From the IMG/VR virus record IMGVR_UViG_3300046542_000248, positions 182,902-246,901 of that record: a stretch of DNA of 64,000 bases, one strand, 5' to 3'. Positions 20,990 to 39,288 of the stretch are shown piece after piece (positions within the stretch are counted from its first letter, which is position 1; each line of letters begins with the position of its first letter). Position numbers and translations under genes: made by a program. The notes below the pieces were generated by a model. It was not told where the DNA came from. It made no database searches and worked only from the letters and a program-made list of their open reading frames with translations.

Positions 20990-22750
20990 ATGGATCGTCA
21001 ATACTTCCGTCAAAACATTTCTAACCCGCAAACATTTCACGGGACAGTTTCCCATGTATTCGATGTACTTGAAAACACAGTTGGTGCTACATATGGACCA
21101 GGTGGTACTCACAATATCTTCATGATGGGACCTGGAGAACTTAGTTCATCCAAAGATGGGCTTGAGAATTTGACTATGATGAAAATGGACAGCACAATTG
21201 CTCGTACAGTTCATCAAATGGCTATCGAAGTTGCTCAGCGTCAAGCATCCATCGTTGGTGATGGTACAACTTCCGCTGTTCTTATAATGGCTCAAGTGTA
21301 CAAACAGCTTCGTACTTCCAAAGCATTGTGGAATAAATATACATCTTCGACGATTCATAATGCAATGAATCAAATCCAAGATGGTATTATCTCTATGCTT
21401 AAAAACGCTGCATCAAAAATCAATACCGATGAAGAAGCATTCCACCTTGCGTACACTTCAACAGATCGCAATCGTGATCTAGCGGATGTTATCGCAAAGG
21501 TTTACAAAATCACTGAAAACTTTGCTGATACGAATATTATCCTTGACTATAGTGCAACGGAACAAACGTATCATTCCAATAGCAAAGGTCTATCAATCAT
21601 GGGTCGTATGATGAACCAAGCGTTCAATAACTACGATATCGAAACTTGTAAATTGAAAGAAGTTGAAGTTGTCGTAGTTGATGGTGCTGCTACTATCACT
21701 AATGACATCCTTGAATATGCAAATCAATTGAAACTTAGCGGTAAATCCTTGTTGATTATCTGCTCTGGTATTAAGAACGAAAACTTCTATCGTTATATTG
21801 AAGCAGTTGCTCAAAAGCAACCTGCATTCTTGCATAACATGGCAGTAGTATACAGCGATGCTAATACATTGCAAAAGAAAGATACTTACTATGATTTGAT
21901 TAAATCATCTGGCTGCGCAATCCTTGAAGAAGGCGTTGAGCTGAACAGTGAAACAATTCGTGAAATCTCCAAAGGGTATGCTCAAAACGTATTGATCAAA
22001 GACAAGAAAATGACTCTTGCTGGGTTTAACCAAACTCCAGAGTTAGAAACTTGGATTGAATCAATTGCTGCTCAAATTGCAGAGATTCACACAATGAACG
22101 ATAATCCGGAAGTATCCAAAGAAGATGTTCTTCAATCTCAAATGAAGATCAATTCGTTGAAAGCTCGCCATGCTAAACTTAAAGATGGTACTACTACTAT
22201 CTATGTAGGTGGCGAAACTAGTCAACGTAAATCTATTAACTATCGTCTTGTCGAAGATGGTGTTAAAGCGTTACAAGCTGCTTTGAACACTGGTTACTTC
22301 GTAGGGTGTAATACTACTACGATGAATGTTATCTATCAACTTCTGATCAAACAGAAGCAATCTAAGGGTAATCTAGATGATGTTTACGGACAACTTCTAA
22401 CGATTATTCTTACCGCTTACATTAATGTATACAAGAAGTTGGTTACAAACCGTGTAGCAACAGCTACCGAAGAAGCATTCTATCAAATGATTATCAATGA
22501 AAAATGTGCTGATATTATCAAGCCAATGGTTGATGATGTATCAGGTATTGAAGTTGATGTCAAGTATGCTGGAACTCCTGTATTCTGCGTAGTAAATCTA
22601 GCTGATGGTGATGAACTGGCTTCTGTAGTAATCAATCCTGCATCCACTGATACACTTATTGTGGAAAAAGCAATTGATGCTGCCTTGATTCTCGCTACTG
22701 CTAATACAATCATGACCGATGAGCATAATGAATTTGAATCTGTCCTTTAA
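20990..22750 (+). CDS. groEL: phage GroEL-like chaperonin (AR9 gp228/EL gp146-like)
   Basis: TYGPGG, SKDG, GDGTTSA, IYVGGET, EDGVKA, AIDAALILAT. Confidence 0.93.
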   Translation: MDRQYFRQNISNPQTFHGTVSHVFDVLENTVGATYGPGGTHNIFMMGPGELSSSKDGLENLTMMKMDSTIARTVHQMAIEVAQRQASIVGDGTTSAVLIMAQVYKQLRTSKALWNKYTSSTIHNAMNQIQDGIISMLKNAASKINTDEEAFHLAYTSTDRNRDLADVIAKVYKITENFADTNIILDYSATEQTYHSNSKGLSIMGRMMNQAFNNYDIETCKLKEVEVVVVDGAATITNDILEYANQLKLSGKSLLIICSGIKNENFYRYIEAVAQKQPAFLHNMAVVYSDANTLQKKDTYYDLIKSSGCAILEEGVELNSETIREISKGYAQNVLIKDKKMTLAGFNQTPELETWIESIAAQIAEIHTMNDNPEVSKEDVLQSQMKINSLKARHAKLKDGTTTIYVGGETSQRKSINYRLVEDGVKALQAALNTGYFVGCNTTTMNVIYQLLIKQKQSKGNLDDVYGQLLTIILTAYINVYKKLVTNRVATATEEAFYQMIINEKCADIIKPMVDDVSGIEVDVKYAGTPVFCVVNLADGDELASVVINPASTDTLIVEKAIDAALILATANTIMTDEHNEFESVL

Positions 22751-24343: not shown

Positions 24344-25858
24344 ATGAGAGCTGATGTCTGTAAACCAAATAGGTATCTAACCGAACAAACTAAACTATTC
24401 AGACTGGGAAAGAAGGACACATTCATTTGTGACTTCGAGAAAATGTTTCCCAATATCGAGAAAAAAGGCTTAAACATCTTTTACATCCCTCGTCCTGCAT
24501 TCTATAAGAAGGGAGATTTAATCTGCGATACAATCAATGTATTTATGAACTATTACGATCCAGATCGTGAGTTAATTACCTGCTATATCAATATGAAGGT
24601 TATGACCGACCTGAGTAATCTAACGTATACGTTCAAAAGCTTCATCAACGATATTGTGAACAAGGTATTCAGCAAATCAATGGTGAAGAAAGTTCGAGGC
24701 TTCGTAGAAGAACAATATCGAGTTGACCTTGAAATCTCTACAGACAAAGATGAGAAATACAAGGAAAACCCGTATCAATTTACGAACAAACATGGAAAGG
24801 TATTGATGGCGATCAGTACTGCTATCAAAATTATCATTCCAATTATCTCCCATTACTATTCAGTACGAAAAGACATGGTAGAAGATATGATCATGAAGAA
24901 ATTCTTGTATCACTGCTTCTATGCCTTATTCCCTATCTTCGAGAAAGATGAAGAGGATAGAGATAAGGATATGAATATCTATAACAAGCTTTACGCTACA
25001 GTGGACAAGATTATCGAAAACTCGACTCACACTGATAGTGGTATGTGGAAACGTAATAAGAACAAAGGTATTACGCCTTCCTCAGAAAAGACTCGGATTA
25101 CCAAAATGGTTATCCAAGATCTTCTGTACAAATATGAATTTGATAAGATCCTTATTAACTTGAATTATGTAGGTATCAGAGGTGCTCTGAAATTTACAAT
25201 TGAAGGTAAGGATACTCATGATTATTCAGATATCAATACCAAGCGTTCCGATAGTAAGATGTCCGGTCTGGAACAATTGGAAATGAACGCTGCGAGAATT
25301 GATGAGCGAGATATTATTATCTCAAGTGCGGGTAGTAAGCATAAGATCGAAAAACTTGTAAAGCAATATAAGATTGAGATCAAAGACGAGGACATGAAGT
25401 TCTATGAGAATAATCTTCAGATGTCGTCCACTCAAACTAATATGGTCTTGCAATTCTTTGCTGATGACTTTAAAGGCTTAGAGAATATGAAACTCATTAC
25501 TAGGCAAGACTTCTTTAGACTGATTATCATCTTGAAGGAAGAGTTATATAGAAGAGGATTCCGTGTGGTTCCAAATCTTATTACTGGTCGTCCTTCTAAT
25601 CGTATCAAGGGAAGAAAGATTGGAACCAAGAAATTGGCGAAGATCAAAGCATTCCCACGCTACTATAACTTGATGAAGCAATACAAAGATGTAACTTCAA
25701 GTATCAATGAAGACATCATCATCAAGTACATCGGTACGTTTATCAACAACCCTCTTACATACGTAGATCACCAAAACAAGGCTCTACTTGGAGAGGACAT
25801 CGAGATTAACGAAAATATGATCATTGATGAGACTATCCGTCTGATCGAAATGTTCTAA
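24344..25858 (+). CDS. non-virion RNAP promoter-specificity subunit (AR9 gp226/phiKZ gp68-like)
   Basis: size, position near the chaperonin as in AR9 (g226/g228), and recalled similarity (DFEKMF, YxxxDxI, SxLEQLEMN..RxD); needs HHpred confirmation. Confidence 0.72.
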   Translation: MRADVCKPNRYLTEQTKLFRLGKKDTFICDFEKMFPNIEKKGLNIFYIPRPAFYKKGDLICDTINVFMNYYDPDRELITCYINMKVMTDLSNLTYTFKSFINDIVNKVFSKSMVKKVRGFVEEQYRVDLEISTDKDEKYKENPYQFTNKHGKVLMAISTAIKIIIPIISHYYSVRKDMVEDMIMKKFLYHCFYALFPIFEKDEEDRDKDMNIYNKLYATVDKIIENSTHTDSGMWKRNKNKGITPSSEKTRITKMVIQDLLYKYEFDKILINLNYVGIRGALKFTIEGKDTHDYSDINTKRSDSKMSGLEQLEMNAARIDERDIIISSAGSKHKIEKLVKQYKIEIKDEDMKFYENNLQMSSTQTNMVLQFFADDFKGLENMKLITRQDFFRLIIILKEELYRRGFRVVPNLITGRPSNRIKGRKIGTKKLAKIKAFPRYYNLMKQYKDVTSSINEDIIIKYIGTFINNPLTYVDHQNKALLGEDIEINENMIIDETIRLIEMF

Positions 25859-28663: not shown

Positions 28664-29020
28664 ATGGCTGGTAAACAAGTGAAGATTCGTGCAAAGAAAG
28701 ACGGTATTCTTTCGAAGAAGCTGATTAAGAAAATTAACGGTGGTCACGAGGACGATACCAAAAAGAAGAAAAAGAAAAAGAAGAAAACGTCTGAGTGGAA
28801 GCCGCACAAGAAGTTCAAAAAGAAAATTGTGCACATTGAGACTAAGAAAGGCAAGGATAAAAAGAAGAAAAAGAAAGAGCATAAAGCTCCTATCAATTTC
28901 AAGAGTTCCAAGAAGTCATCTTCGAATACATCGGACGGTGCAAGAATCTTCCAGCTCTTGAAGAAAGATATGGATATTAAACTTGAACTTACTAAGCTGC
29001 TTCAAAAGATTTTAAAGTAG
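28664..29020 (+). CDS. extremely Lys-rich basic protein, putative nucleic-acid binding
   Basis: long poly-K runs, 118 aa. Confidence 0.65.
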   Translation: MAGKQVKIRAKKDGILSKKLIKKINGGHEDDTKKKKKKKKKTSEWKPHKKFKKKIVHIETKKGKDKKKKKKEHKAPINFKSSKKSSSNTSDGARIFQLLKKDMDIKLELTKLLQKILK

Positions 29021-29955: not shown

Positions 29956-30714
29956 ATGTCGAAATATATACAAATAATCCCCAATCATTTTGGGATAAAG
30001 ATGTTAGAAAATGTTGCTCGTGGAAGTGGTAAGTCTGTAACTCTTCCATCTGACGGGCTTGAATATGAATTACTCAAAGCATACGTTGCAAACTTTCCAA
30101 AGAAGAAGGAAGGTAATCTTCCTAAGAAATTTCAACATGCTGGTTCAGATACATTTGTTATCCATGCTGAGACTAATGAAAATAAACCTGTTAGAACACT
30201 GGGACCTCAAGATCCTAATGAGGTATATAGATTCTTTGGAAGAATCAAAAGAAAGAAGCTCAATCAAATCATTACTAAACATCCTTATGCCAAGGTTTTA
30301 GTTGATCTTGGAAATGGGCTTAATAAGAGGGTTCCTATTAGAATCTTTAAGAAGTTATTACAGATTAAGTTCATTATCTTTGAACGAGACTACGAGTTCT
30401 GTTCACCTGATGAACATGAGTCTGAGTCGATGAATGTTGTCTGGGAAGCACCTCCTGAGATCATAAAGGAGTATATCTACTCTATCAACCAACTACTTTA
30501 CGTTCTTACTGTAGAGAGTTCTTATGATAAAGCAGTAGAAAACTTCCTGCTATCCAAATTCTTCTTATTGGTAGGACAAGAGAAAACTCTAAAGATCATG
30601 TATCAAAATGGTAAGTGTGAGAAGATGAAACTTGATGCGTTCTTAACTGAATATGGAATTAACGTTGATGTAAACTTCAATCGTATTTGGGATAAACAAG
30701 GAAGGTGGTCATAA
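29956..30714 (+). CDS. hypothetical protein
   Basis: 252 aa; SD taaggag. Confidence 0.7.
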   Translation: MSKYIQIIPNHFGIKMLENVARGSGKSVTLPSDGLEYELLKAYVANFPKKKEGNLPKKFQHAGSDTFVIHAETNENKPVRTLGPQDPNEVYRFFGRIKRKKLNQIITKHPYAKVLVDLGNGLNKRVPIRIFKKLLQIKFIIFERDYEFCSPDEHESESMNVVWEAPPEIIKEYIYSINQLLYVLTVESSYDKAVENFLLSKFFLLVGQEKTLKIMYQNGKCEKMKLDAFLTEYGINVDVNFNRIWDKQGRWS

Positions 30715-31027: not shown

Positions 31028-31235
31028 GAAAAACAAAGAATTCGGTAGAGAGCACTTAGCCCTCTACCGAGTTTATTTTTTTTTTGTTTACTTATTAGCT
31101 ACAAATAATGAAGGATTAGTTATTAATCTAACTTGTTTAAAATACTTCTTTAATTTTCGAGAAGTCATATCTTTATATGCTGGTATATTTGTATGTACTT
31201 CTTTAGCTGATATAGCAACTGCTGGTTGTGATCTT

Positions 31236-32273
31236 TTAGACATTTGAATCGCTCCTTTTTAATAAAAGTTCTTTATTGATTTTATCTTGATCATGATTAA
31301 GCATTCGACATTGATCATCATACCATTGCTGATCTTTACCGAGTTCAAAGAAATTATACTCAATATAAACAAAGTTATTAACAGATTCTTTATTAAGTAT
31401 TTCTCTAAGAGTATCTAAATCCATCATATAATAACTATCTTCCCATTGTAAAGCACCATTAATTACATGATCTACATGAAGAGATGAATTATCATCTGTA
31501 ATGAATGAAGAAATCATAATAGAACGAATCTTATTAGAATTATACCTGGCTGACATTGCATTAGCCCTATAGAAAGCTGGGATAGAAGCAGAGAATAGAG
31601 GCTCAAAGAATTTGACACTATCAGCAAGATGATAGTATTGCACATTCATAAACAATTCTCTACCGTACCAATCTGCCTTCTGAATACTTGTAGGAATTGG
31701 TATTGTCATAACACCCGTATTTAAACGAGTATTCTTAATTTGTCTAGCTCTTTCAACCATTTTATGCGTTGTATTGAAATAGTCTGGAAGATTGTGAAGA
31801 ATTTCACCAATACGATTAAATACAGCAGCATTGTTTTCTGTATCAGGGTTAATAACTCCTACATTGCTACCATTTTCTCCGAATAGGAATAGATATGCTA
31901 GTAGTTGTCCATAAGTCAATTCCCTATGATGCTGTCTTGGAAGTCGTACAACGTGATTAAGATTATTAAACGCAGTGTACAGAATTGCAAAAGTTCCTTT
32001 ATTGATAGGAAAATGTTCTGTTGGAGTTGCACCGCCGCCCATAGTTTCAATACGAGCAACTTCTCTGAAATAATACCAGGGATTGGTTGTACATTCCAAG
32101 ATAATCTTTTGCTTCTGTACAGATGTGAGGTTTGGATCATATGGATCTACATCTTGTAAATCATTATTATGCAGATGTAACATATGCGGAACTGTTAAAC
32201 CGTGTTCCTTAAATAATTTGTACAGAGCAAGGAATGAAATGTTCTTAGTATTGTGATGATACCAATAACTCAT
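31236..32273 (-). CDS. degenerate terminase-large-subunit ATPase paralog (no nuclease domain)
   Basis: TKNISFL...VDPYDP...EC..NPWYYFREVARI, typical of jumbo-phage TerL N termini; PRQHHRELT in place of PRQxGKT; 345 aa only. Confidence 0.7.
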   Translation of the reverse strand: MSYWYHHNTKNISFLALYKLFKEHGLTVPHMLHLHNNDLQDVDPYDPNLTSVQKQKIILECTTNPWYYFREVARIETMGGGATPTEHFPINKGTFAILYTAFNNLNHVVRLPRQHHRELTYGQLLAYLFLFGENGSNVGVINPDTENNAAVFNRIGEILHNLPDYFNTTHKMVERARQIKNTRLNTGVMTIPIPTSIQKADWYGRELFMNVQYYHLADSVKFFEPLFSASIPAFYRANAMSARYNSNKIRSIMISSFITDDNSSLHVDHVINGALQWEDSYYMMDLDTLREILNKESVNNFVYIEYNFFELGKDQQWYDDQCRMLNHDQDKINKELLLKRSDSNV

Positions 32274-32557
32274 TCTGCTTCCACCTTTACATTGAAATTT
32301 TTCATTTCTTCTGCAATGATTTCATTAGCTCGTTGATCACGATGGAAGATGGTTTTAATATAATCCGCTACTTGACCTCTGTTCCTAGAAAGAGAGTTTG
32401 TAGTAGCGACAGCTCTAGAAAGCTTTTCAATATTAATAGAACCATCTTCATTTTGGAAAGTGACCGCTTTAGTAGGATTCTCTAAAAGTTGTCTAACCTT
32501 CTTTTGAATCAAGTGCTTTCTTTCAGTAGTCAAATCTTTGGTCGCTGTTTTTAACAT
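32270..32557 (-). CDS. hypothetical protein
   Basis: 95 aa; SD aggagg; overlaps the start of the TerL paralog by 4 nt. Confidence 0.65.
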   Translation of the reverse strand: MLKTATKDLTTERKHLIQKKVRQLLENPTKAVTFQNEDGSINIEKLSRAVATTNSLSRNRGQVADYIKTIFHRDQRANEIIAEEMKNFNVKVEAE

Positions 32558-32577
32558 TTGTGTAGCCTCCTATAAAA

Positions 32578-32675: not shown

Positions 32676-33731
32676 ATGGATAGTCAGAAAGTAGAATACA
32701 TAATTAAAACTTTATTCGAATCTTTAAAGAATGTGAAATATAATACTGACCAAACTGAATTACTGTGTGTATGTCCATACTGCGCTGGTGGCCGAAAAGG
32801 GGAGCGCTCGTTCTATATATCTATACCAACTAAAGAAAAACCAAGATTCTTATACAGATGCTTCAGGGCTGGCTGTAGACATGGACAAACTAAGGGTTAT
32901 ATCACACCAGATTTCCTTAGGATGATTGACTGTAATAATTACGAAGCGAACATTTACCTTAACGGGTTGAATAGGCAAGATGTAAAAGAAAAGAGATTTA
33001 CTAAGAAAGGTGCTAGATACCTAAAGAATTTTCCTTCTCCTGAAGATAAGTTGTCTAGAGCTAAGTTGCACTATCTTAATAAAAGATTGGGTATTGATCT
33101 AAAGATGAAGGATCTAATTAAGTTAAAGATCCATACTAATATGAATGAATTGTTTAAGTATAATGATGTATCTGTAGATAAGAAGAAAGAATATTACTAT
33201 AAGAATCTTTCTGATCATGGGATTGGATTTATATCCACGTATAATGATTACATTAATATACGAAATGCCACTGGTACAGAAAAGATTAAACGCTATACAA
33301 TCGTAGATATCTTTGATGCCGATGATGACGTTGAGAAATTCAAAACGTATAATATTCCTACAAAGATAGATCTACTCTCTGATGATCCAATTGAATTAAT
33401 TCTTGCAGAGGGATCGTTCGATATACTTTCAGTCTTCTTTAATATAGAAGATGAGGATGTCTTCAATAAAGTATATTGCTCAGTCTCTGGAGCTTCATAT
33501 GAAAGAATCATTAATCATTATATAAGACAATTTGGTTTGTTGGATTTAGTAGTAAAGATCTACTCAGATTCAGAAGTTGAATTATCTTATTATGAACGAA
33601 TCTATAAAAACATCAAGAAGTTTACCAATAGTCTTGAAATGTATGTCTACTATAATAAGAAGAGTGGGCAAAAAGACTTTGGTGTAACTAGAGAAGAAAT
33701 GGATATTCAAGAGAATTATATCTGGAACTAA
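32676..33731 (+). CDS. DNA primase (zinc finger + TOPRIM)
   Basis: CPYC...CFRAGC; LILAEGSFD; YSDSE; KDFG. Confidence 0.88.
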   Translation: MDSQKVEYIIKTLFESLKNVKYNTDQTELLCVCPYCAGGRKGERSFYISIPTKEKPRFLYRCFRAGCRHGQTKGYITPDFLRMIDCNNYEANIYLNGLNRQDVKEKRFTKKGARYLKNFPSPEDKLSRAKLHYLNKRLGIDLKMKDLIKLKIHTNMNELFKYNDVSVDKKKEYYYKNLSDHGIGFISTYNDYINIRNATGTEKIKRYTIVDIFDADDDVEKFKTYNIPTKIDLLSDDPIELILAEGSFDILSVFFNIEDEDVFNKVYCSVSGASYERIINHYIRQFGLLDLVVKIYSDSEVELSYYERIYKNIKKFTNSLEMYVYYNKKSGQKDFGVTREEMDIQENYIWN

Positions 33732-33855: not shown

Positions 33856-35145
33856 TTATTTTTTTGTGGGTAATACTATTTTACCTGCCATATCCATAGT
33901 GATCTGGCTAAGACCATCTAGGAACTTCCATGCTATGGAATTATGAACTACTGTAAAGTCTGTTGCTAATTTAAACATGTAGTTGTAAAGCTTGATAAGA
34001 CTATCCAACTTAGATTTATAATCAGCAAGTACTCGTTGCTCAGCATTTACAATATTCCACTTATTAGCTTTCTTAGCATTATCAATTCTATCCAAACTTA
34101 ATTGAAGTTCTTTAGTGATCATTTGCTCATAAAGTTTAAGTTTAGCTGGAATAACCTTATCAGCATAATCAATAATTTTTTCTTGCTGCCTTTCCATATG
34201 CTTTGCTTTCTCATATAGATAATCCATATCATCTTTGGGCCATACGATCACTTTCTTATTCGGACCATAGAGATTTTCATAGATAGATTCTTCACTATAC
34301 GGAGTTTTGAATACTTCCGCAAAGATAGAATCAAGGAATCGCTTCTCATTATCAATGATAGAATCGGTGAACATTACTACCTTAGAATCAGTTTGAGTTA
34401 AACCAATGATTCTTTGGATACGATCATCAAAGATATCAAATACCTTTTCGATCCCTTTAGCAAAGAAATCATAATCAGGTTTATCATACACATGAGAATG
34501 AACTGTCATCTCATAATTGATACTCTTCATATCAACTAACTTTGCAAGCTCTGGGTACTTCTCTTTCCATTCCGATTTAGCTTCATCAGCTTTACTTTTC
34601 TTACGAGAAAACTTACTCTTTAAGAAAGCAATAAACTGAAGTACTTTCTCTTTAATCCATTTAAAGAACCTACTGATATAAGATAAGAATCCACCATTAG
34701 AACTCTCAGTCAAAATATCCATAACAGATTCTGTAACATAATCGTTATTAATTAAAAGAAAATCAGGCAATGAGGATTCATGCAACTTATGTAATTCTTC
34801 CTCAAGTTCTGCAATTCTTTCCTTATTAGCCTCAGCACCAGATCTTTTCAGTAAGAAAATCTTATGACTAATTTCTTTCTTTTGCTGTGAAGTTGATGGT
34901 GGAGTTGAAGATACAATCTCATCATAACGCTTTTGAAGTTCCTCAATCTGTTTAGCAATCTCATCACTATGACCATGAAGTTGCTGCTGTCTAAGTTTGC
35001 CGATTCTAGTTTTAATTTGCTGCTTTTCATGTGTTACACGATTCTCATCTTTCCATTGAGGTAATGGGAAGTTAAATGATGATTCGTTTATTTCCTGAAA
35101 AGAATATCCTTCTTGAATAAGAAGTAGTTTAGAAGTTACATCCAT
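33856..35145 (-). CDS. internal head protein, KLxLIQEG family
   Basis: MDVTSKLLLIQEG; LTES; FFKWIKEKVLQF; start moved to follow SD ggaggg. Confidence 0.75.
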   Translation of the reverse strand: MDVTSKLLLIQEGYSFQEINESSFNFPLPQWKDENRVTHEKQQIKTRIGKLRQQQLHGHSDEIAKQIEELQKRYDEIVSSTPPSTSQQKKEISHKIFLLKRSGAEANKERIAELEEELHKLHESSLPDFLLINNDYVTESVMDILTESSNGGFLSYISRFFKWIKEKVLQFIAFLKSKFSRKKSKADEAKSEWKEKYPELAKLVDMKSINYEMTVHSHVYDKPDYDFFAKGIEKVFDIFDDRIQRIIGLTQTDSKVVMFTDSIIDNEKRFLDSIFAEVFKTPYSEESIYENLYGPNKKVIVWPKDDMDYLYEKAKHMERQQEKIIDYADKVIPAKLKLYEQMITKELQLSLDRIDNAKKANKWNIVNAEQRVLADYKSKLDSLIKLYNYMFKLATDFTVVHNSIAWKFLDGLSQITMDMAGKIVLPTKK

Positions 35146-35235
35146 TGCTATCCCTCCATAATTGATTATTCTAATTATAAGTTTTACATGCAAAAAGCCA
35201 TCTACATTTTTAGTAGATGACCTCTATTATGCAGA

Positions 35236-36298
35236 TTAAAGATTTTTACCTTTTTCAACGATTTTCGTATACTCAGCGTTAGCAATCTGTTCAGTCTTCG
35301 AAAGAAGACTCTCAGTGATGCTACCATGAGTTACAATGAAATCGTTAGTAATTTTGATCAGGTAGTTGAAAGATTTAACTACGAAACTTAATTTACGTTT
35401 CATTGTCATGATCTCTTTACCTGCTTGAGTTGCAGCGTCATGATCTTGAGAACTATTTGCTTTGTTCAATTTCTCTGTAGCTAGAGCAATTTGAGTATCA
35501 AATGCTCTCTTGTAATGACCAAGTTCTTCTTTGAGGGTTTTCTCTGAGAAATTAATGATACGATTACTTTGATCTTGCATATGACGCAATTTTGCTACCA
35601 ATTTAGTCATATCGAAAACGGTAACGGTTTCTTTCTTAGCGTCACCGTATACCAGTTTAATCAAATTCTCTTTACTATAATCAATACCAAGAGCAGACTT
35701 GAAAAGAGAATCAAGGAATTTCTGCTCATTATTAATTGCAGTGTCGTTGATTCCTTTTGCGCTGTCATTAGGAGTAGACACAATTGAAGATACGCTGTCT
35801 TTAACTGTGCTGTAAACTTTTCCTAAACCAATTTGCCAAGAAATCTACATTGTCTTTATCGTATACATTAGTATACGTTTCAACTTCATAGTCAGTAACC
35901 GATTTGCCAACAGTTGCTTTGAATTTCGGACTTTCAATTATTGCTACTTGCTCTTTAACTTTCTCTTCAACTTTATCGGTTCTAGTTTTAGTAGTACCGC
36001 CAGTGAATTTACTTTTAACGAACTTAACGAATTGTGCAATTTTATCAGCAATCCATTGGAATAGCTTAGCTACTGTAGCAAGGAATCCTTTGCTTTGAGC
36101 AGCACCATCACTCTCAGTGAGAGAACCGATTGTTAAATCAGCCATAAAGTTAATATCAGTTGAAACGCTCTCAATGAATAGTGAGAATTCATCACCAGCA
36201 GCTTCTGTTACTAGCTCTGTGAAACTTTTAGCACCAGAATTGATTTCTCCGATAGAGAAACCTTCCTGAATAAGTTGTAGTTTTTTTGCAATTTCCAT
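35236..36298 (-). pseudogene. KLxLIQEG family head protein interrupted by a +1 frameshift near 35830
   Basis: removing one base joins MEIAKKLQLIQEG...DFLAN to GLGKVYSTVKDS...INNEQKFLDS, collinear with neighbours. Confidence 0.75.
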
Positions 36299-36344
36299 GA
36301 CGTTTCCGCCTCCCATTATAATATTGTACACTAATTAGAAGTTG

Positions 36345-37367
36345 TTAAACGTTAACTGTAACTACAATATCACTGCGCAGTTTATCGGTCACAGTTTTAT
36401 GAGCCATCATAAATTCATTTGCAAGTTTAAATGTGTATTTGTATAGCTTAGAAATTTGCTGCACTTTAACTCTATTTACTTCCATCAAGTAATTTTGTTT
36501 GGCAATGGTTTGAGCATCCATATTCTTTGCCAGTATTTCAGTCTCATGATCCTGTATTTCAGGATTATTGATTCTATTAATCTTTTCCTCAGCTCTTGCA
36601 ATATGTATATTCAGAGCTGCTTCATAGTTTGAAAAATCTTTAGATATAGTTGATTTAACGAAATTAACAATCGCCCACTCTTGTGATTCCAAATGACTCA
36701 ATCTTGTATACAGAGTAAGTAGATTAGCACTGGAAGCATTAACCTTTTTGATAGGTCCATATATAATATCAAATATAGCGTTATTGCTATAATTAACATC
36801 AAAGCAGTCATTAAAGATAGTATTCATGAATTTTTGTTCATTATCAATATCAGGATTAACTGTAGTTGGATCTCCTGATGAATCGTGAAGTACTTCTAGA
36901 GCACGTTTATTCAGTACTTCAAAAACTATATTCACACCATTTCCAAAGTAGTCTTCTTTTTCATAATCAAATACATTACTGTATACATCAATTTGCTTTA
37001 CACCTTGAGCTTCAAACTTTATTCTAAACTCAGGCATCTGTATTCTATCAATAGATTCTTTGATAGACTTATTAATCTTAGTAGTATCAATTCTATTAGA
37101 TGAAAACTTATGTGTAATAAATTTAATAAATTGTGATATCTTTTCTCTAATCCAAGCAAGGAATTTTTTAATCTGTACCAAGATTCCAGTACCTGAACTT
37201 TCATAGATCATCATTACTGACATACTGTCAATATCGGAGATAACACCTTCAGTGAATAGTGATAGGCTATCGCTATTAATTGATTCAAATATTGATACTT
37301 TGCCAGCATTAATATCTTCAATAGAATTACCTTCTTGAATTAAACGTAGTTTTCTTGAAATATCCAT
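36345..37367 (-). CDS. internal head protein, KLxLIQEG family
   Basis: MDISRKLRLIQEG; YES; FLAWIREKISQF. Confidence 0.75.
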   Translation of the reverse strand: MDISRKLRLIQEGNSIEDINAGKVSIFESINSDSLSLFTEGVISDIDSMSVMMIYESSGTGILVQIKKFLAWIREKISQFIKFITHKFSSNRIDTTKINKSIKESIDRIQMPEFRIKFEAQGVKQIDVYSNVFDYEKEDYFGNGVNIVFEVLNKRALEVLHDSSGDPTTVNPDIDNEQKFMNTIFNDCFDVNYSNNAIFDIIYGPIKKVNASSANLLTLYTRLSHLESQEWAIVNFVKSTISKDFSNYEAALNIHIARAEEKINRINNPEIQDHETEILAKNMDAQTIAKQNYLMEVNRVKVQQISKLYKYTFKLANEFMMAHKTVTDKLRSDIVVTVNV

Positions 37368-37450
37368 ATTTGTACCTCCGTTATTATAATTTTCTATCAT
37401 AGGTTTCATAAATAAGATCATCTACCGCGAAGTAGATGATCTCTTAATTT

Positions 37451-38329
37451 TTACATATACTTCTCAATCATCGTTAATTTATTAATATGTGCATTCACGT
37501 ATGAAAGAATCTCTGGATATGTGTGTAACATTGTTTCACACAGAAGTTGAATGATCTTGAAACTGTCATCAGCCATTGCACTAAGATTCTCTATTTGAGT
37601 TTCGTAGTAACCTAATGCCTGATGCATATCTTTCCATAGATCATAGAATGAATCAGTGAATATGATAATATTTTGAATTTGCTCTTTGGACTGTATCCGA
37701 ACAGCGGCTGATTTATTAAGCGATAAATCAAGTGCATTCGGTGTGACATTTTTATCATAGGAAATTGGCGCTCCATTGAGTACCTTTCTCCAGATAATAC
37801 TTTGCATTCCGTTAACATCAGTACTGGATGTAATTTCGGAATTATAACCAGCACCAGTATACGCATAATCAACGTAATCAGCATTGACATCTTCGAATTT
37901 ACCAACCAAATTTTTTAGAACTGTCATTGCAGCATTTGGATCATTGACAATCATATCAAAATTGTCTGGAACCATAAATGGATGAAATTCTTTACTCATT
38001 ATCTTTTTCAAACTGGATGTAGTTTGTATGTGAGTTTCATGTTTCTTCTTTTGAAACATGTGCATTATGAAAGTTTTAAATTGACGAATCTTTTCGAGTA
38101 TCCAATTAATGAACTTTCTAAGAACGCTGGTTTTATCGCCATCACTCTCTTTGAGTATATTCATACTCATTTGAGAAACGTAGCTAAAATCAACAGCGAC
38201 ACTTTCTATGAATAATTGAAGTTCATCAGCGGATTCATTGATACTGGAGAATGATTTAGCTTCTCCTGAATTGATTTCTCCGATTGAGAAACCTTCTTGA
38301 ATAAGACGAAGTTTCGATGTTACGCTCAT
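37451..38329 (-). CDS. internal head protein, KLxLIQEG family
   Basis: MSVTSKLRLIQEG; LKES; FINWILEKIRQF. Confidence 0.75.
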   Translation of the reverse strand: MSVTSKLRLIQEGFSIGEINSGEAKSFSSINESADELQLFIESVAVDFSYVSQMSMNILKESDGDKTSVLRKFINWILEKIRQFKTFIMHMFQKKKHETHIQTTSSLKKIMSKEFHPFMVPDNFDMIVNDPNAAMTVLKNLVGKFEDVNADYVDYAYTGAGYNSEITSSTDVNGMQSIIWRKVLNGAPISYDKNVTPNALDLSLNKSAAVRIQSKEQIQNIIIFTDSFYDLWKDMHQALGYYETQIENLSAMADDSFKIIQLLCETMLHTYPEILSYVNAHINKLTMIEKYM

Positions 38330-38354
38330 GGTATATAAACCTCCCGAATTATAT

Positions 38355-39227
38355 TTAAGTCATATTTCTATCTAGTGTAACTAAACGTCCTAAATGTGAA
38401 TCAACGTATTTAAGAATTTCTGGAAGTGTATACAAGATAGTCTCACATACAAGCCTTATTGATCTAAAGCTTTCGTCCGAGAGACTTCTTAGTTTTTTCA
38501 ATTGACCTTCGTAATAAGATAAAGATTCATTGATATCTTTCCATAGATCATAAAAATTACCAGCAAACTCAACGATATTTTGAACTTGATATGATGAGTT
38601 AATTTCGACCGATGGCACTCGTTTAAGTGTAATATCTATCGCAGATTTAGTGATGTTATTATCACTTGTAATATTGCGACCAATTATCACTTGACCCCAA
38701 GTAACTTTTCTAAGATCAGAAATACTTTGATACCGAGTCATCTCAGCAGTATCTCCATTATATACAGCATCAAATCTTCTAACCAATGAATCTTCAAATC
38801 TTTCCATTACATCTTTGAGATTTTTAATGGCATCTTTAGGAGAATATACCACATCTTCAAAAGTATCATAAAAAACAAAAGGTGTAAAATTCTTACCTAA
38901 TAGAGATTGTAATTTTGCTAGATGAGTATAAGTTAATTCTTGTTTTTTCTTTCTAAACAAATTCATTAGTAGCATTTTAAATTGACCTATTTTCTGAACG
39001 ATCATATCCAGAATTCTTCTGAAGATAAGATCTTTATTAGGTCGGTTAACAGGTACATCACTCTCTTGTAAGAGAGAATTACTCATCTCAGAAATATACT
39101 CCAAATCAATAAAAAGACTGGAGAAAAGTAAAGAGAAGTCATCTTTTGGAAGTGTAATATGTCCTGTATTTATATCACTTATGGTATATCCTTCTTGGAT
39201 GAGTCGAAGCTTGGATTGTATGTCCAT
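38355..39227 (-). CDS. internal head protein, KLxLIQEG family
   Basis: MDIQSKLRLIQEG; LQES; close paralog of 37451..38329. Confidence 0.75.
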   Translation of the reverse strand: MDIQSKLRLIQEGYTISDINTGHITLPKDDFSLLFSSLFIDLEYISEMSNSLLQESDVPVNRPNKDLIFRRILDMIVQKIGQFKMLLMNLFRKKKQELTYTHLAKLQSLLGKNFTPFVFYDTFEDVVYSPKDAIKNLKDVMERFEDSLVRRFDAVYNGDTAEMTRYQSISDLRKVTWGQVIIGRNITSDNNITKSAIDITLKRVPSVEINSSYQVQNIVEFAGNFYDLWKDINESLSYYEGQLKKLRSLSDESFRSIRLVCETILYTLPEILKYVDSHLGRLVTLDRNMT

Positions 39228-39288
39228 CACTAGGCAACCTCCTGTCAACGAATAATTTTTACTCCGTTGTAATTATAATTACAGGTTA

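What the first reader, a model, noticed from the sequence alone, without database searches (positions are those of the whole stretch)
31236..32557. Pseudo-terminase: TerL ATPase domain with broken Walker A and no nuclease
The N terminus is recognisably jumbo-phage TerL, but PRQxGKT reads PRQHHRELT, no clear Walker B DE is visible, and the protein ends at the ATPase-domain boundary. It is translationally coupled to a 95-aa gene. It might regulate packaging, or act as a decoy for terminase-sensing defences such as Avs2.
Basis: partly seen in the sequence, partly recalled or inferred. Interest (0 to 1): 0.6.

Follow-up and report, generated by a model that had tools for sequence, protein, structure and literature searches.

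The report
Catalytically dead terminase ATPase-domain paralogue
This jumbo phage carries, besides its normal DNA-packaging enzyme, a second shortened copy that keeps the enzyme's shape and docking ends but has lost every catalytic residue; it belongs to a widespread, apparently undescribed family that probably modulates packaging rather than powering it.

Summary
Window 31236-32273 (-) encodes a 345-aa protein homologous to the ATPase domain of large terminase (TerL). Walker A reads PRQHHRELT instead of PRQxGKT, Walker B reads YYHLA instead of WFDEF, and the protein stops exactly at the ATPase-domain boundary. An ATGA overlap couples it to a 95-aa gene.

It is not half of a split terminase. 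The same 246.9-kb phage genome has an intact 720-aa TerL about 52 kb away.

It is also not a one-off. A profile search found about 38 representatives among the top 150 hits that are short (about 315-375 aa) and have degenerate Walker motifs. Most fall in one group on the tree, and at least three more origins are needed.

Within these dead forms the N-terminal about 70-100 residues and the C-terminal lid (helix-loop-helix) are as conserved as in live TerLs. The catalytic core is not. In some contigs, further-reduced copies keep only those end modules.

Four complete or near-complete jumbo-phage genomes hold a dead copy plus a live TerL. In one of them the two genes are adjacent.

Best reading: a TerL pseudoenzyme that keeps TerL's docking surfaces and acts as a non-catalytic modulator of the packaging motor. 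The function is inferred, not shown. The Avs-decoy idea is neither supported nor excluded.

The parts
31236..32273 (-). Gene for the 345-aa dead TerL ATPase-domain paralogue (P0001)
   Evidence: ORF. PHROG TerL hits. AF2 model with pLDDT 94.6 and pTM 0.93. Best structural match is the T4 gp17 ATPase domain, Z 21.9.
31974..32273 (-). N-terminal module, residues 1-100 (NxSF ... DPYDPNL ... ECxxNPWYYFREVARI). Residues 1-70 are as conserved in the dead forms as in live TerLs; residues 71-100 somewhat less.
   Evidence: Ratio of dead to live conservation is about 0.8-1.2 for residues 1-70 and 0.56-0.72 for 71-100. Invariant columns N11, F14, L39, P44, E60, N64, Y67, R70, E71 in the dead-family alignment. 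A 96-aa stand-alone version exists in L121.
31914..31940 (-). Degenerate Walker A, residues 112-120: PRQHHRELT in place of PRQxGK(T/S)
   Evidence: Alignments. The column is variable across the dead family. Conservation ratio 0.34.
31620..31643 (-). Degenerate Walker B and catalytic-Glu position, residues 211-218: VQYYHLAD in place of hhhhDE
   Evidence: Alignments.
31254..31463 (-). C-terminal lid-like region, residues 271-340, ending in a helix-loop-helix (H315-324, H329-336) and the motif RELLLKR. Mostly conserved at TerL level.
   Evidence: Conservation ratio 0.7-1.0 in six of the seven ten-residue blocks; block 291-300 is 0.38. Secondary structure. All family members end at this boundary.
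32270..32557 (-). Upstream 95-aa gene, overlapping the pseudo-TerL start by ATGA. GGAGG lies 8 nt before its ATG (32566-32570).
   Evidence: 67% identical homologue upstream in L010. Only weak HTH-like leads from the ESM Atlas.
31088..31243 (-). Possible 51-aa downstream ORF with a GGAG 8 nt upstream. It overlaps the pseudo-TerL stop (ATGTCTAA). Not conserved in relatives.
31042..31070 (-). Terminator-like hairpin (12 pairs, 7 G-C, T-rich tail) closing the three-gene unit

Best explanation
The gene encodes a pseudoenzyme. It is a stand-alone paralogue of the TerL ATPase domain that keeps the full fold but can no longer hydrolyse ATP (the Walker A, Walker B and coupling motifs are gone; nucleotide binding is probably lost too, though this is not shown). 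It has no nuclease domain.

It belongs to an old family of such dead copies that sit in jumbo-phage genomes alongside a normal TerL.

Selection has kept only two parts: the N-terminal module and the C-terminal lid (helix-loop-helix). In phage T4 gp17, the region reported to touch the portal is a helix-loop-helix by the hinge, and the NsubII subdomain relays to the nuclease domain.

Inferred mechanism: the protein occupies a TerL docking site, on the portal and/or on TerL itself, without translocating or cutting DNA. It would therefore act as a non-catalytic modulator (gatekeeper, placeholder or accessory subunit) of the phage's own packaging motor.

Shown: homology, fold, loss of motifs, family-wide conservation pattern, and co-occurrence with an intact TerL. 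Inferred: the binding partner, and the direction of the effect on packaging.
For: Identity and fold.

Intact 720-aa TerL elsewhere in the same genome.

Orthologues at about 50% identity keep the same degenerate motifs (RLPRQHYRExTY, QYYHLAD) and the same end.

Family: 38 of the 153 aligned sequences are dead, most about 315-375 aa. Only 5 live ones are under 500 aa.

Tree: 32 dead forms fall in one group (SH-aLRT 92), sister to a live clade (joint support 99). At least 4 state changes are needed. Character W277 agrees with this tree.

Conservation: residues 1-70 and most of 271-340 are about as conserved as in live TerL. Residues 111-270 are at 0-0.35 of the live level in most blocks.

Natural deletions keep the N module and lid only (L121 275 aa, G012 243 aa), or the N module only (L121 96 aa).

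G000, G001, G002 and G004 each have a dead and a live copy. In G004 the two are 4 nt apart.

For T4, a helix-loop-helix near the hinge is reported as the portal-contact region, and a peptide of that sequence inhibits packaging in vitro (PMC9958956).

Co-folding of P0001 with its own TerL residues 1-640 gave weak support: score 0.51, best of 3 controls 0.00. That mark was reached by 58 of 80 solved complexes and 2 of 110 mismatched pairs, but at 0.60 or under by only 7 of those 80 and by both mismatches that passed. The runs agree in at least 91% of contacts, and partner pLDDT is at least 84.
Against: - There is no experimental or expression evidence. Only DNA runs from rhizosphere metagenomes hold the sequence.
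- The gene lies beside a primase and far from TerL in G000, G001 and G002, not in the packaging module.
- Distribution is patchy. There are 4 clear cases among 26 large IMG/VR records examined (G000-G025), and none in 3 cultured relatives. Whatever it does is dispensable.
- By the tool's own calibration, the co-fold pass is more often wrong than right unless the pair was likely beforehand.
- The match of the C-terminal helix-loop-helix to the T4 portal-binding helix-loop-helix rests on aligned ranges, not on a residue-level superposition.
- Grouping of the fast-evolving dead forms in the tree could partly be long-branch attraction.
Confidence: 0.45

Rival explanations
1. Anti-defence decoy or sponge. 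The dead ATPase domain binds host sensors that recognise TerL (Avs1-3, Upx) and blocks or titrates them.
For: TerL-fold proteins other than TerL (T4 vs.8, Ksap1, Ksap2) are reported or proposed activators of Avs2, and the authors suggest such proteins may be anti-defence factors (PMC13601566). Upx is reported to recognise the ATPase core without needing catalytic residues. Patchy, accessory distribution and recurrent origins suit an arms-race gene. The gene lies among replication genes rather than in the late packaging module.
Against: The parts kept by selection are the N module and lid, not the ATPase core. The core is what Upx is modelled to bind, and the nucleotide site is what EcAvs2 contacts through a bridging ATP. 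A protein that binds these sensors would be expected to trigger them, as vs.8 does. No sensor partner was tested here.
Confidence: 0.15
2. Inter-phage weapon. The protein is a dominant-negative TerL mimic that poisons the packaging motors of co-infecting related jumbo phages while sparing its own.
For: The same docking-without-activity logic applies. The window's copy is not derived from the genome's own TerL lineage; it groups with a different TerL clade, which suggests horizontal acquisition. Distribution is patchy.
Against: In G002 and G004 the dead copy and the live TerL appear to come from sister lineages, and in G004 they are adjacent, which points to action on the phage's own motor. The docking modules are conserved at the same level as in all live TerLs, so self-sparing is hard to explain.
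Confidence: 0.1
3. Neofunctionalised DNA-handling factor working with the 95-aa protein. The pair resembles a small and large terminase subunit, binds DNA (replication or recombination intermediates) and neither cuts nor pumps it.
For: The gene order, a small gene overlapping a TerL-like gene, mimics TerS-TerL. The 95-aa protein has weak HTH-like structural leads. The pair lies next to a primase here, and a primase is also nearby in G002. No recognisable TerS was found in the genome for two Pfam TerS families.
Against: The 95-aa partner is found only in the closest subclade. In both close relatives an NT5C gene precedes the pseudo-TerL gene, and in L010 it separates it from the 97-aa gene. Neighbourhoods of other family members differ. 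The HTH lead scores below the tool's reliability marks.
Confidence: 0.15
4. Decaying duplicate with no function.
For: All catalytic motifs are lost and the central core evolves freely. Distribution is patchy.
Against: Open frames of about 340 codons are kept in about 38 deeply diverged representatives, all ending at the same boundary. The N and C modules are as conserved as in essential TerLs. Orthologues at 50% identity conserve even the replacement residues. The AF2 model is confident.
Confidence: 0.05
5. N-terminal half of a split, functional terminase whose nuclease half is encoded elsewhere.
For: The best PHROG hit, phrog_32359, has a 210-position profile, the length of the N fragment of a truly split TerL found here (L018/G021, 211 aa).
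Against: Those split fragments keep PRQRGKT. This protein lacks the Walker A Lys/Thr, the Walker B Asp/Glu and the coupling motif. The genome encodes a complete 720-aa TerL with all motifs and a nuclease domain. No stand-alone nuclease half was found; the only third match, E 1e-3, lies in an unrelated 204-aa ORF.
Confidence: 0.01

Closest known systems
Large terminase subunit (TerL) of phiKZ-like, AR9-like and Takahashivirus-type jumbo phages; structurally the T4 gp17 ATPase domain (PDB 2O0H, 2O0J, 3CPE)
   Same: Homologous over the whole ATPase domain (26-31% identity). Same fold and same domain boundary (Z 21.9, model 19-345 aligned to gp17 40-360). N-terminal module and lid conserved to the same degree.
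   Different: No Walker A Lys/Thr, no Walker B Asp/Glu, no coupling motif and no nuclease domain. Encoded in addition to a normal TerL.
T4 vs.8, a stand-alone ATPase-like protein homologous to the T4 terminase ATPase domain (Evans et al. 2026, PMC13601566)
   Same: A phage-encoded, nuclease-less, TerL-ATPase-like protein present beside the real TerL. Function unknown. Restricted to certain phage taxa.
   Different: vs.8 is 219 aa and is reported to keep the Walker A and B motifs. It is toxic with EcAvs2. There is no detectable sequence relation to this family (hhalign probability 0.3%). The present family is about 340 aa, spans the entire domain, and is catalytically dead.
Split TerL N-terminal fragments (phrog_32359 type; example L018/G021)
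   Same: Short ORFs matching the TerL N terminus. They give the strongest family-scan hit.
   Different: They are parts of one interrupted functional gene. They have an intact PRQRGKT, and the rest of TerL follows about 2 kb downstream.
Pseudo-ATPase subunits of oligomeric ASCE/RecA-like machines, such as RAD51 paralogues that cap RAD51 filaments. General concept; from my own knowledge plus PDB titles.
   Same: A paralogue of an oligomeric ATPase that keeps the fold and interaction surfaces while losing catalysis.
   Different: No evidence yet that this protein enters or caps a TerL ring. It is not homologous to these at the family level.

Membership tests
Large terminase subunit (functional TerL) | ASCE/P-loop ATPase fold of the terminase type | tested here: met
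   AF2 model pLDDT 94.6. Top PDB matches are T4 gp17, P74-26, HK97, Sf6 and D6E TerL ATPase domains.
Large terminase subunit (functional TerL) | Walker A with conserved Lys-Thr/Ser (PRQxGKT or PRQxYKT in this clade) | tested here: not met
   PRQHHRELT. All 115 live sequences aligned keep K(T/S).
Large terminase subunit (functional TerL) | Walker B Asp followed by catalytic Glu | tested here: not met
   YYHLA in place of WFDEF.
Large terminase subunit (functional TerL) | Coupling (C) motif (S/T)T(T/P) after strand 4 | tested here: not met
   ISSFI in place of ITSTP / ITTTP. Conservation at positions 257-258 is lost across the dead forms.
Large terminase subunit (functional TerL) | C-terminal RNase H-like nuclease domain | tested here: not met
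   The protein ends at residue 345, at the ATPase-domain boundary. The stop codon is followed by a terminator-like hairpin.
Split TerL N fragment (phrog_32359 type) | Intact catalytic motifs, with the remaining TerL part encoded nearby in the same genome instead of a full-length TerL | tested here: not met
   Motifs are degenerate. A full-length TerL is present at G000:C1:161269-163431.
T4 vs.8-like stand-alone terminase ATPase-like proteins | Sequence homology to vs.8 and conserved Walker A/B | tested here: not met
   hhalign of the family profile against T4 vs.8 gives probability 0.3%. Walker motifs are lost.
Pseudoenzyme (dead paralogue under selection) | Fold retained, catalytic residues lost, and purifying selection on other surfaces across a family | tested here: met
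Pseudoenzyme (dead paralogue under selection) | Absence of ATP binding and hydrolysis shown biochemically | not testable with these tools
   Needs purified protein.
Avs-type decoy / anti-defence protein | Binds a terminase sensor and alters its activation | not tested
   No sensor sequence was co-folded or assayed. The literature gives only analogy.

The most novel reading that the evidence does not exclude
These proteins are the first pseudo-ATPase regulators of a viral DNA-packaging motor. They would be TerL mimics that dock on the portal (or cap a nascent TerL ring) through the conserved N module and lid helix-loop-helix, and so gate when, or on which capsids, packaging can start. They have arisen several times independently in jumbo phages and have been pared down in some genomes to the docking modules alone. 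A variant of this reading is that the same mimicry is used against terminase-sensing immunity.
Probability: 0.25. Interest if true: 0.8.

Novelty: new variant of a known kind. Interest (0 to 1): 0.62.

Why it matters
Terminase is one of the most conserved and best-studied parts of tailed phages, and it is a main target of bacterial pattern-recognition immunity. A recurrent, conserved, catalytically dead copy of its motor domain points to an unrecognised layer of control, or of conflict, at the packaging step.

The family also marks out by natural selection which parts of the TerL ATPase domain carry non-catalytic function: the N-terminal module and the lid helix-loop-helix. That makes the roles of these parts directly testable in a group of phages where no small terminase subunit is known.

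It also adds a dead counterpart to the stand-alone terminase-like proteins (T4 vs.8, Ksap1/2) whose function was recently called an open question (PMC13601566).

Tried and rejected
- Pfam gave no significant hit for the 345-aa protein, nor for the longer family members P0025, P0090, P0065, P0088 and P0131. No fusion partner gives a clue.
- Sequence search of the PDB found nothing.
- Megablast of the region against 50,697 phage records found nothing.
- The first AF2 run, with a 3-sequence alignment, was useless (pLDDT 35). It was replaced by a 111-row alignment.
- The word-based protein search found only two orthologues because of its length and word limits. The exhaustive representative search was therefore used.
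- IMG/VR scans mostly returned real TerLs: 8 of 8 loci and 78 of 80.
- Split-gene hypothesis: rejected.
- Relation to T4 vs.8: rejected at sequence level.
- The 95-aa partner as a family-wide companion: rejected.
- TerS search with PF11053 and PF03592 found no match. Only two families were tried, so this is not proof of absence.
- The sequencing-run search found only two DNA runs from rhizosphere metagenomes, one probably the source, and no RNA. Read laying was therefore not used and expression is untested.
- The trans-arginine-finger idea (a dead subunit stimulating a live neighbour) was weakened. R205 is kept in only 22 of 31 main-clade dead forms, against all 74 live sequences in that alignment.
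- Four literature searches found no description of dead terminase paralogues.
- Only genetic code 11 was used.

Full report
**1. What is in the window**

On the minus strand there is a compact unit:
- A GGAGG at 32566-32570, 8 nt before the first ATG.
- A 95-aa ORF at 32557-32270.
- A 345-aa ORF at 32273-31236, whose ATG overlaps the upstream TGA as ATGA.
- A possible 51-aa ORF at 31243-31088, with its own GGAG, overlapping the stop of the 345-aa gene.
- A terminator-like hairpin at 31070-31042.

The unit is transcribed divergently from a DNA primase gene at 32676-33731 (phrog_19847, E 1e-42). It converges on a zinc-ribbon ORF and a well-conserved 252-aa ORF.

The window is the last 64 kb of a 246,901-bp IMG/VR virus record rated 100% complete. 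GC content is about 34%. The window also holds a GroEL-like gene and an RNA-polymerase subunit gene. The DNA is found in rhizosphere metagenomes.

**2.

- The 345-aa protein (P0001) has no Pfam hit. It matches PHROG TerL families.
- By tblastn it matches the first halves of TerLs in 314 jumbo-phage records. The best are Bacillus phages BpSp and Goe21, then Staphylococcus SA1/S6 and phiKZ-like phages, at 26-31% identity. Those TerLs are 658-733 aa.
- Aligned with them and with the genome's own TerL, P0001 shows LPRQHHRELT for LPRQFGKTTG, YYHLA for WFDEF, and ISSFI for ITSTP. It stops at 'LLLKR', where the others continue into the linker and nuclease domain.

**3. It is not half of a split terminase**

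- The same genome encodes a 720-aa TerL at G000:C1:161269-163431. It has an intact PRQFGKT, WFDE, ITSTP and the nuclease domain. It lies about 52 kb from the pseudo-TerL gene.
- P0001 is only about 30% identical to it, no closer than to TerLs of other phages.
- True split TerLs exist. L018/G021 has a 211-aa N fragment followed by the rest about 2 kb downstream. They keep PRQRGKT. A split N fragment of about that length would explain why phrog_32359, a 210-position profile, gives the best family hit.

**4. It is a member of a large family**

- The word-based search found two orthologues, P0002 (344 aa) and P0003 (339 aa), about 50% identical. They share even the replacement residues (RLP[RK]QHYRExTY and YYHLAD) and the same C-terminal end.
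- That tool only sees proteins of similar length, and the novelty claim rests on absence of relatives. I therefore ran the exhaustive profile search. It gave 1,221 hits at E <= 1e-3, of which the best 150 are listed.
- I aligned these 150 with P0002, P0003 and the genome's own TerL (153 rows) and scored the motif columns. 38 sequences lack K(T/S) and/or DE. Most of them are about 315-375 aa; a few carry unrelated extensions.
- The other 115 are live, and only 5 of those are under 500 aa.
- Within the dead set the Walker columns are not just altered but variable: DD, DN, NN, NE, SD, HL.

**5. Phylogeny** (IQ-TREE, LG+G4, 153 ATPase domains)

- 32 dead forms, including P0001-3, fall in one group (SH-aLRT 92). 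It is sister to a live TerL clade of 18 (joint support 99).
- The remaining six dead forms sit in three other places. One of them, P0147, is next to the clade that holds this genome's own TerL.
- At least four live/dead changes are required.
- A discrete character agrees with the tree. Position 277 is W in the main dead group and in its live sister clade, and F in most other live TerLs and in the other dead forms.
- The window's dead copy therefore does not derive from its own TerL lineage. It was probably acquired from, or inherited with, another jumbo-phage lineage.
- Caveat: long-branch attraction among fast-evolving dead forms cannot be excluded.

**6. What selection keeps**

Mean pairwise BLOSUM scores per ten-residue block, dead (37 rows) against live (74 rows), give these ratios:
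- About 1 (range 0.77-1.19) for residues 1-70.
- 0.56-0.72 for residues 71-100.
- About 1 for residues 271-290 and 311-330, and 0.70-0.74 for 301-310 and 331-340. Block 291-300 is an exception at 0.38.
- Between 0 and 0.35 for most blocks of the catalytic core (111-270). This core includes Walker A, the putative arginine finger R205, Walker B and the coupling motif.

Nature has repeated the experiment by deletion:
- Contig L121 carries three tandem derivatives. One is 275 aa (N module, a remnant of the core, and the lid). One is the full 346-aa P0022. One is 96 aa (N module alone).
- G012 has a 243-aa copy that also lacks much of the core.

**7. Structure**

- With a 111-row alignment, AF2 gives a confident model: pLDDT 94.6, pTM 0.93.
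- Foldseek and VIA-align both rank the T4 gp17 ATPase domain first (2O0J: Z 21.9, rmsd 4.0, 264 residues; model 19-345 against gp17 40-360). Other TerL ATPase domains follow.
- The model ends in a helix-loop-helix (315-324, 329-336), immediately before the point where the hinge would begin.
- The correspondence of the two helix-loop-helices is inferred from aligned ranges, not from a residue-level superposition.

**8. Genomic company**

- G001 (246.7 kb, TerL 65% identical to this phage's) and G002 (234 kb, with terminal repeats) each hold one dead copy and one live TerL.
- G004 has a 327-aa dead copy 4 nt upstream of its 736-aa TerL. That is the position a small terminase gene usually occupies, and it is a plausible picture of the founding tandem duplication.
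- Among the 26 large IMG/VR records examined (G000-G025), four clearly carry a dead copy. Two more carry odd short copies.
- BpSp, PhiPA3 and SA1 have only TerL.
- Neighbourhoods otherwise differ.
- The 95-aa partner is found only in the nearest subclade. In both close relatives an NT5C gene precedes the pseudo-TerL gene, and in L010 it separates that gene from the 97-aa homologue.

**9. Mechanism**

- Shown: this is a TerL ATPase-domain pseudoenzyme under selection on its N-terminal module and lid, kept alongside an intact TerL.
- Inferred: it still binds what those modules bind in TerL, namely the portal and/or TerL itself. Having neither motor nor nuclease activity, it would modulate assembly or timing of the packaging motor.
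- A co-fold of P0001 with its own TerL residues 1-640 gave weak support only:
  - Score 0.51, best of 3 controls 0.00.
  - The mark was reached by 58 of 80 solved complexes and 2 of 110 mismatched pairs. At 0.60 or under it was reached by only 7 of those 80 and by both mismatches that passed.
  - The runs agree in at least 91% of contacts, and partner pLDDT is at least 84.
  - I treat this as a hint, not as evidence.
- Rivals: anti-defence decoy, inter-phage poison, DNA-handling pair with the 95-aa protein, and plain decay. Each is weighed in its own section.
- The decoy idea is topical, since TerL-fold proteins vs.8 and Ksap1/2 are reported or proposed to engage Avs2 (PMC13601566). But the regions conserved here are not the ones those sensors are reported to read.

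**10. Novelty**

- Four full-text searches found no description of catalytically dead TerL paralogues. A 224-genome comparative survey of jumbo phages does not mention them in any of the passages where it discusses terminase (PMC7824862).
- The nearest published thing is T4 vs.8. It is shorter, is reported to keep its Walker motifs, and is unrelated in sequence to this family.
- I therefore rate this a new variant of a known kind: stand-alone terminase-ATPase-like phage proteins, and pseudoenzymes in general.

**11. Limits**

- There are no expression data. No RNA run holds the stretch, and read laying was not used.
- Only the best 150 of 1,221 hits could be classified.
- The tree used a quick search and is unrooted.
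- Model coordinates could not be inspected, so surface mapping is by sequence position only.

Noticed in passing
window 33856-39248 (-): Six tandem paralogous genes (445, 181, 176, 358, 292 and 297 aa) share an N-terminal 'KLxLIQEGxSxxEIN' motif. The adjacent 176-aa and 181-aa ORFs match the N and C halves of the 358-aa type, so they are a split or broken copy. No PHROG hit for the four of them that were scanned (445, 358, 292 and 297 aa).
   Followed up: partly
window 31088-31243 (-): A 51-aa ORF with a GGAG 8 nt upstream overlaps the last codons of the pseudo-TerL gene (ATGTCTAA) and ends just before the terminator-like hairpin at 31042-31070. It is absent from the two close relatives, so it may be spurious or lineage-specific.
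   Followed up: partly
window 29956-30714 (+): A 252-aa protein of unknown function converges on the pseudo-TerL unit. It is much better conserved in the relatives (76% and 58% identity) than the pseudo-TerL itself (about 50%). No Pfam or PHROG hit.
   Followed up: partly
L009 2-355 and L010 374-1087: In both close relatives an NT5C-type 5'-nucleotidase gene lies immediately upstream of the pseudo-TerL gene. In L010 it sits between the 97-aa homologue of the upstream gene and the pseudo-TerL gene. The window lacks it, which is how the ATGA coupling arises here.
   Followed up: yes
L121 1127-3404: Tandem array of three TerL-N derivatives in one metagenomic contig: 275 aa (much of the core deleted), 346 aa (P0022) and 96 aa (N-terminal module only).
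   Followed up: yes
L105 490-3687 (G004:C1:183512-186709): A 327-aa dead TerL copy lies 4 nt upstream of the live 736-aa TerL, the position usually held by a small terminase gene.
   Followed up: yes
L018 5977-6609; G021:C1:89560-92535: TerL split into a 211-aa N fragment with intact PRQRGKT and a downstream part about 2 kb away whose frame holds stops. This looks like an intron or homing-element interruption. Several other IMG/VR TerLs are only 470-520 aa (for example L061-L064) and may be interrupted too.
   Followed up: partly
L120 563-1432 (-) (G010) and L119 1136-1867 (+) (G012): Other kinds of short TerL-like paralogues. One is 289 aa with an intact GKT but a D-N Walker B. The other is 243 aa, keeps HKT and DE, and lacks much of the core.
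   Followed up: partly
window 28664-29020 (+): A 118-aa ORF is extremely rich in lysine, with a run of about nine K. Function unknown.
   Followed up: no
window 20990-22750 (+) and 24344-25858 (+): A GroEL-like chaperonin (phrog_5725, E 7e-55) and an RNA-polymerase subunit (phrog_25005, E 6e-25). Both are consistent with a jumbo phage that has its own multisubunit RNA polymerase.
   Followed up: no
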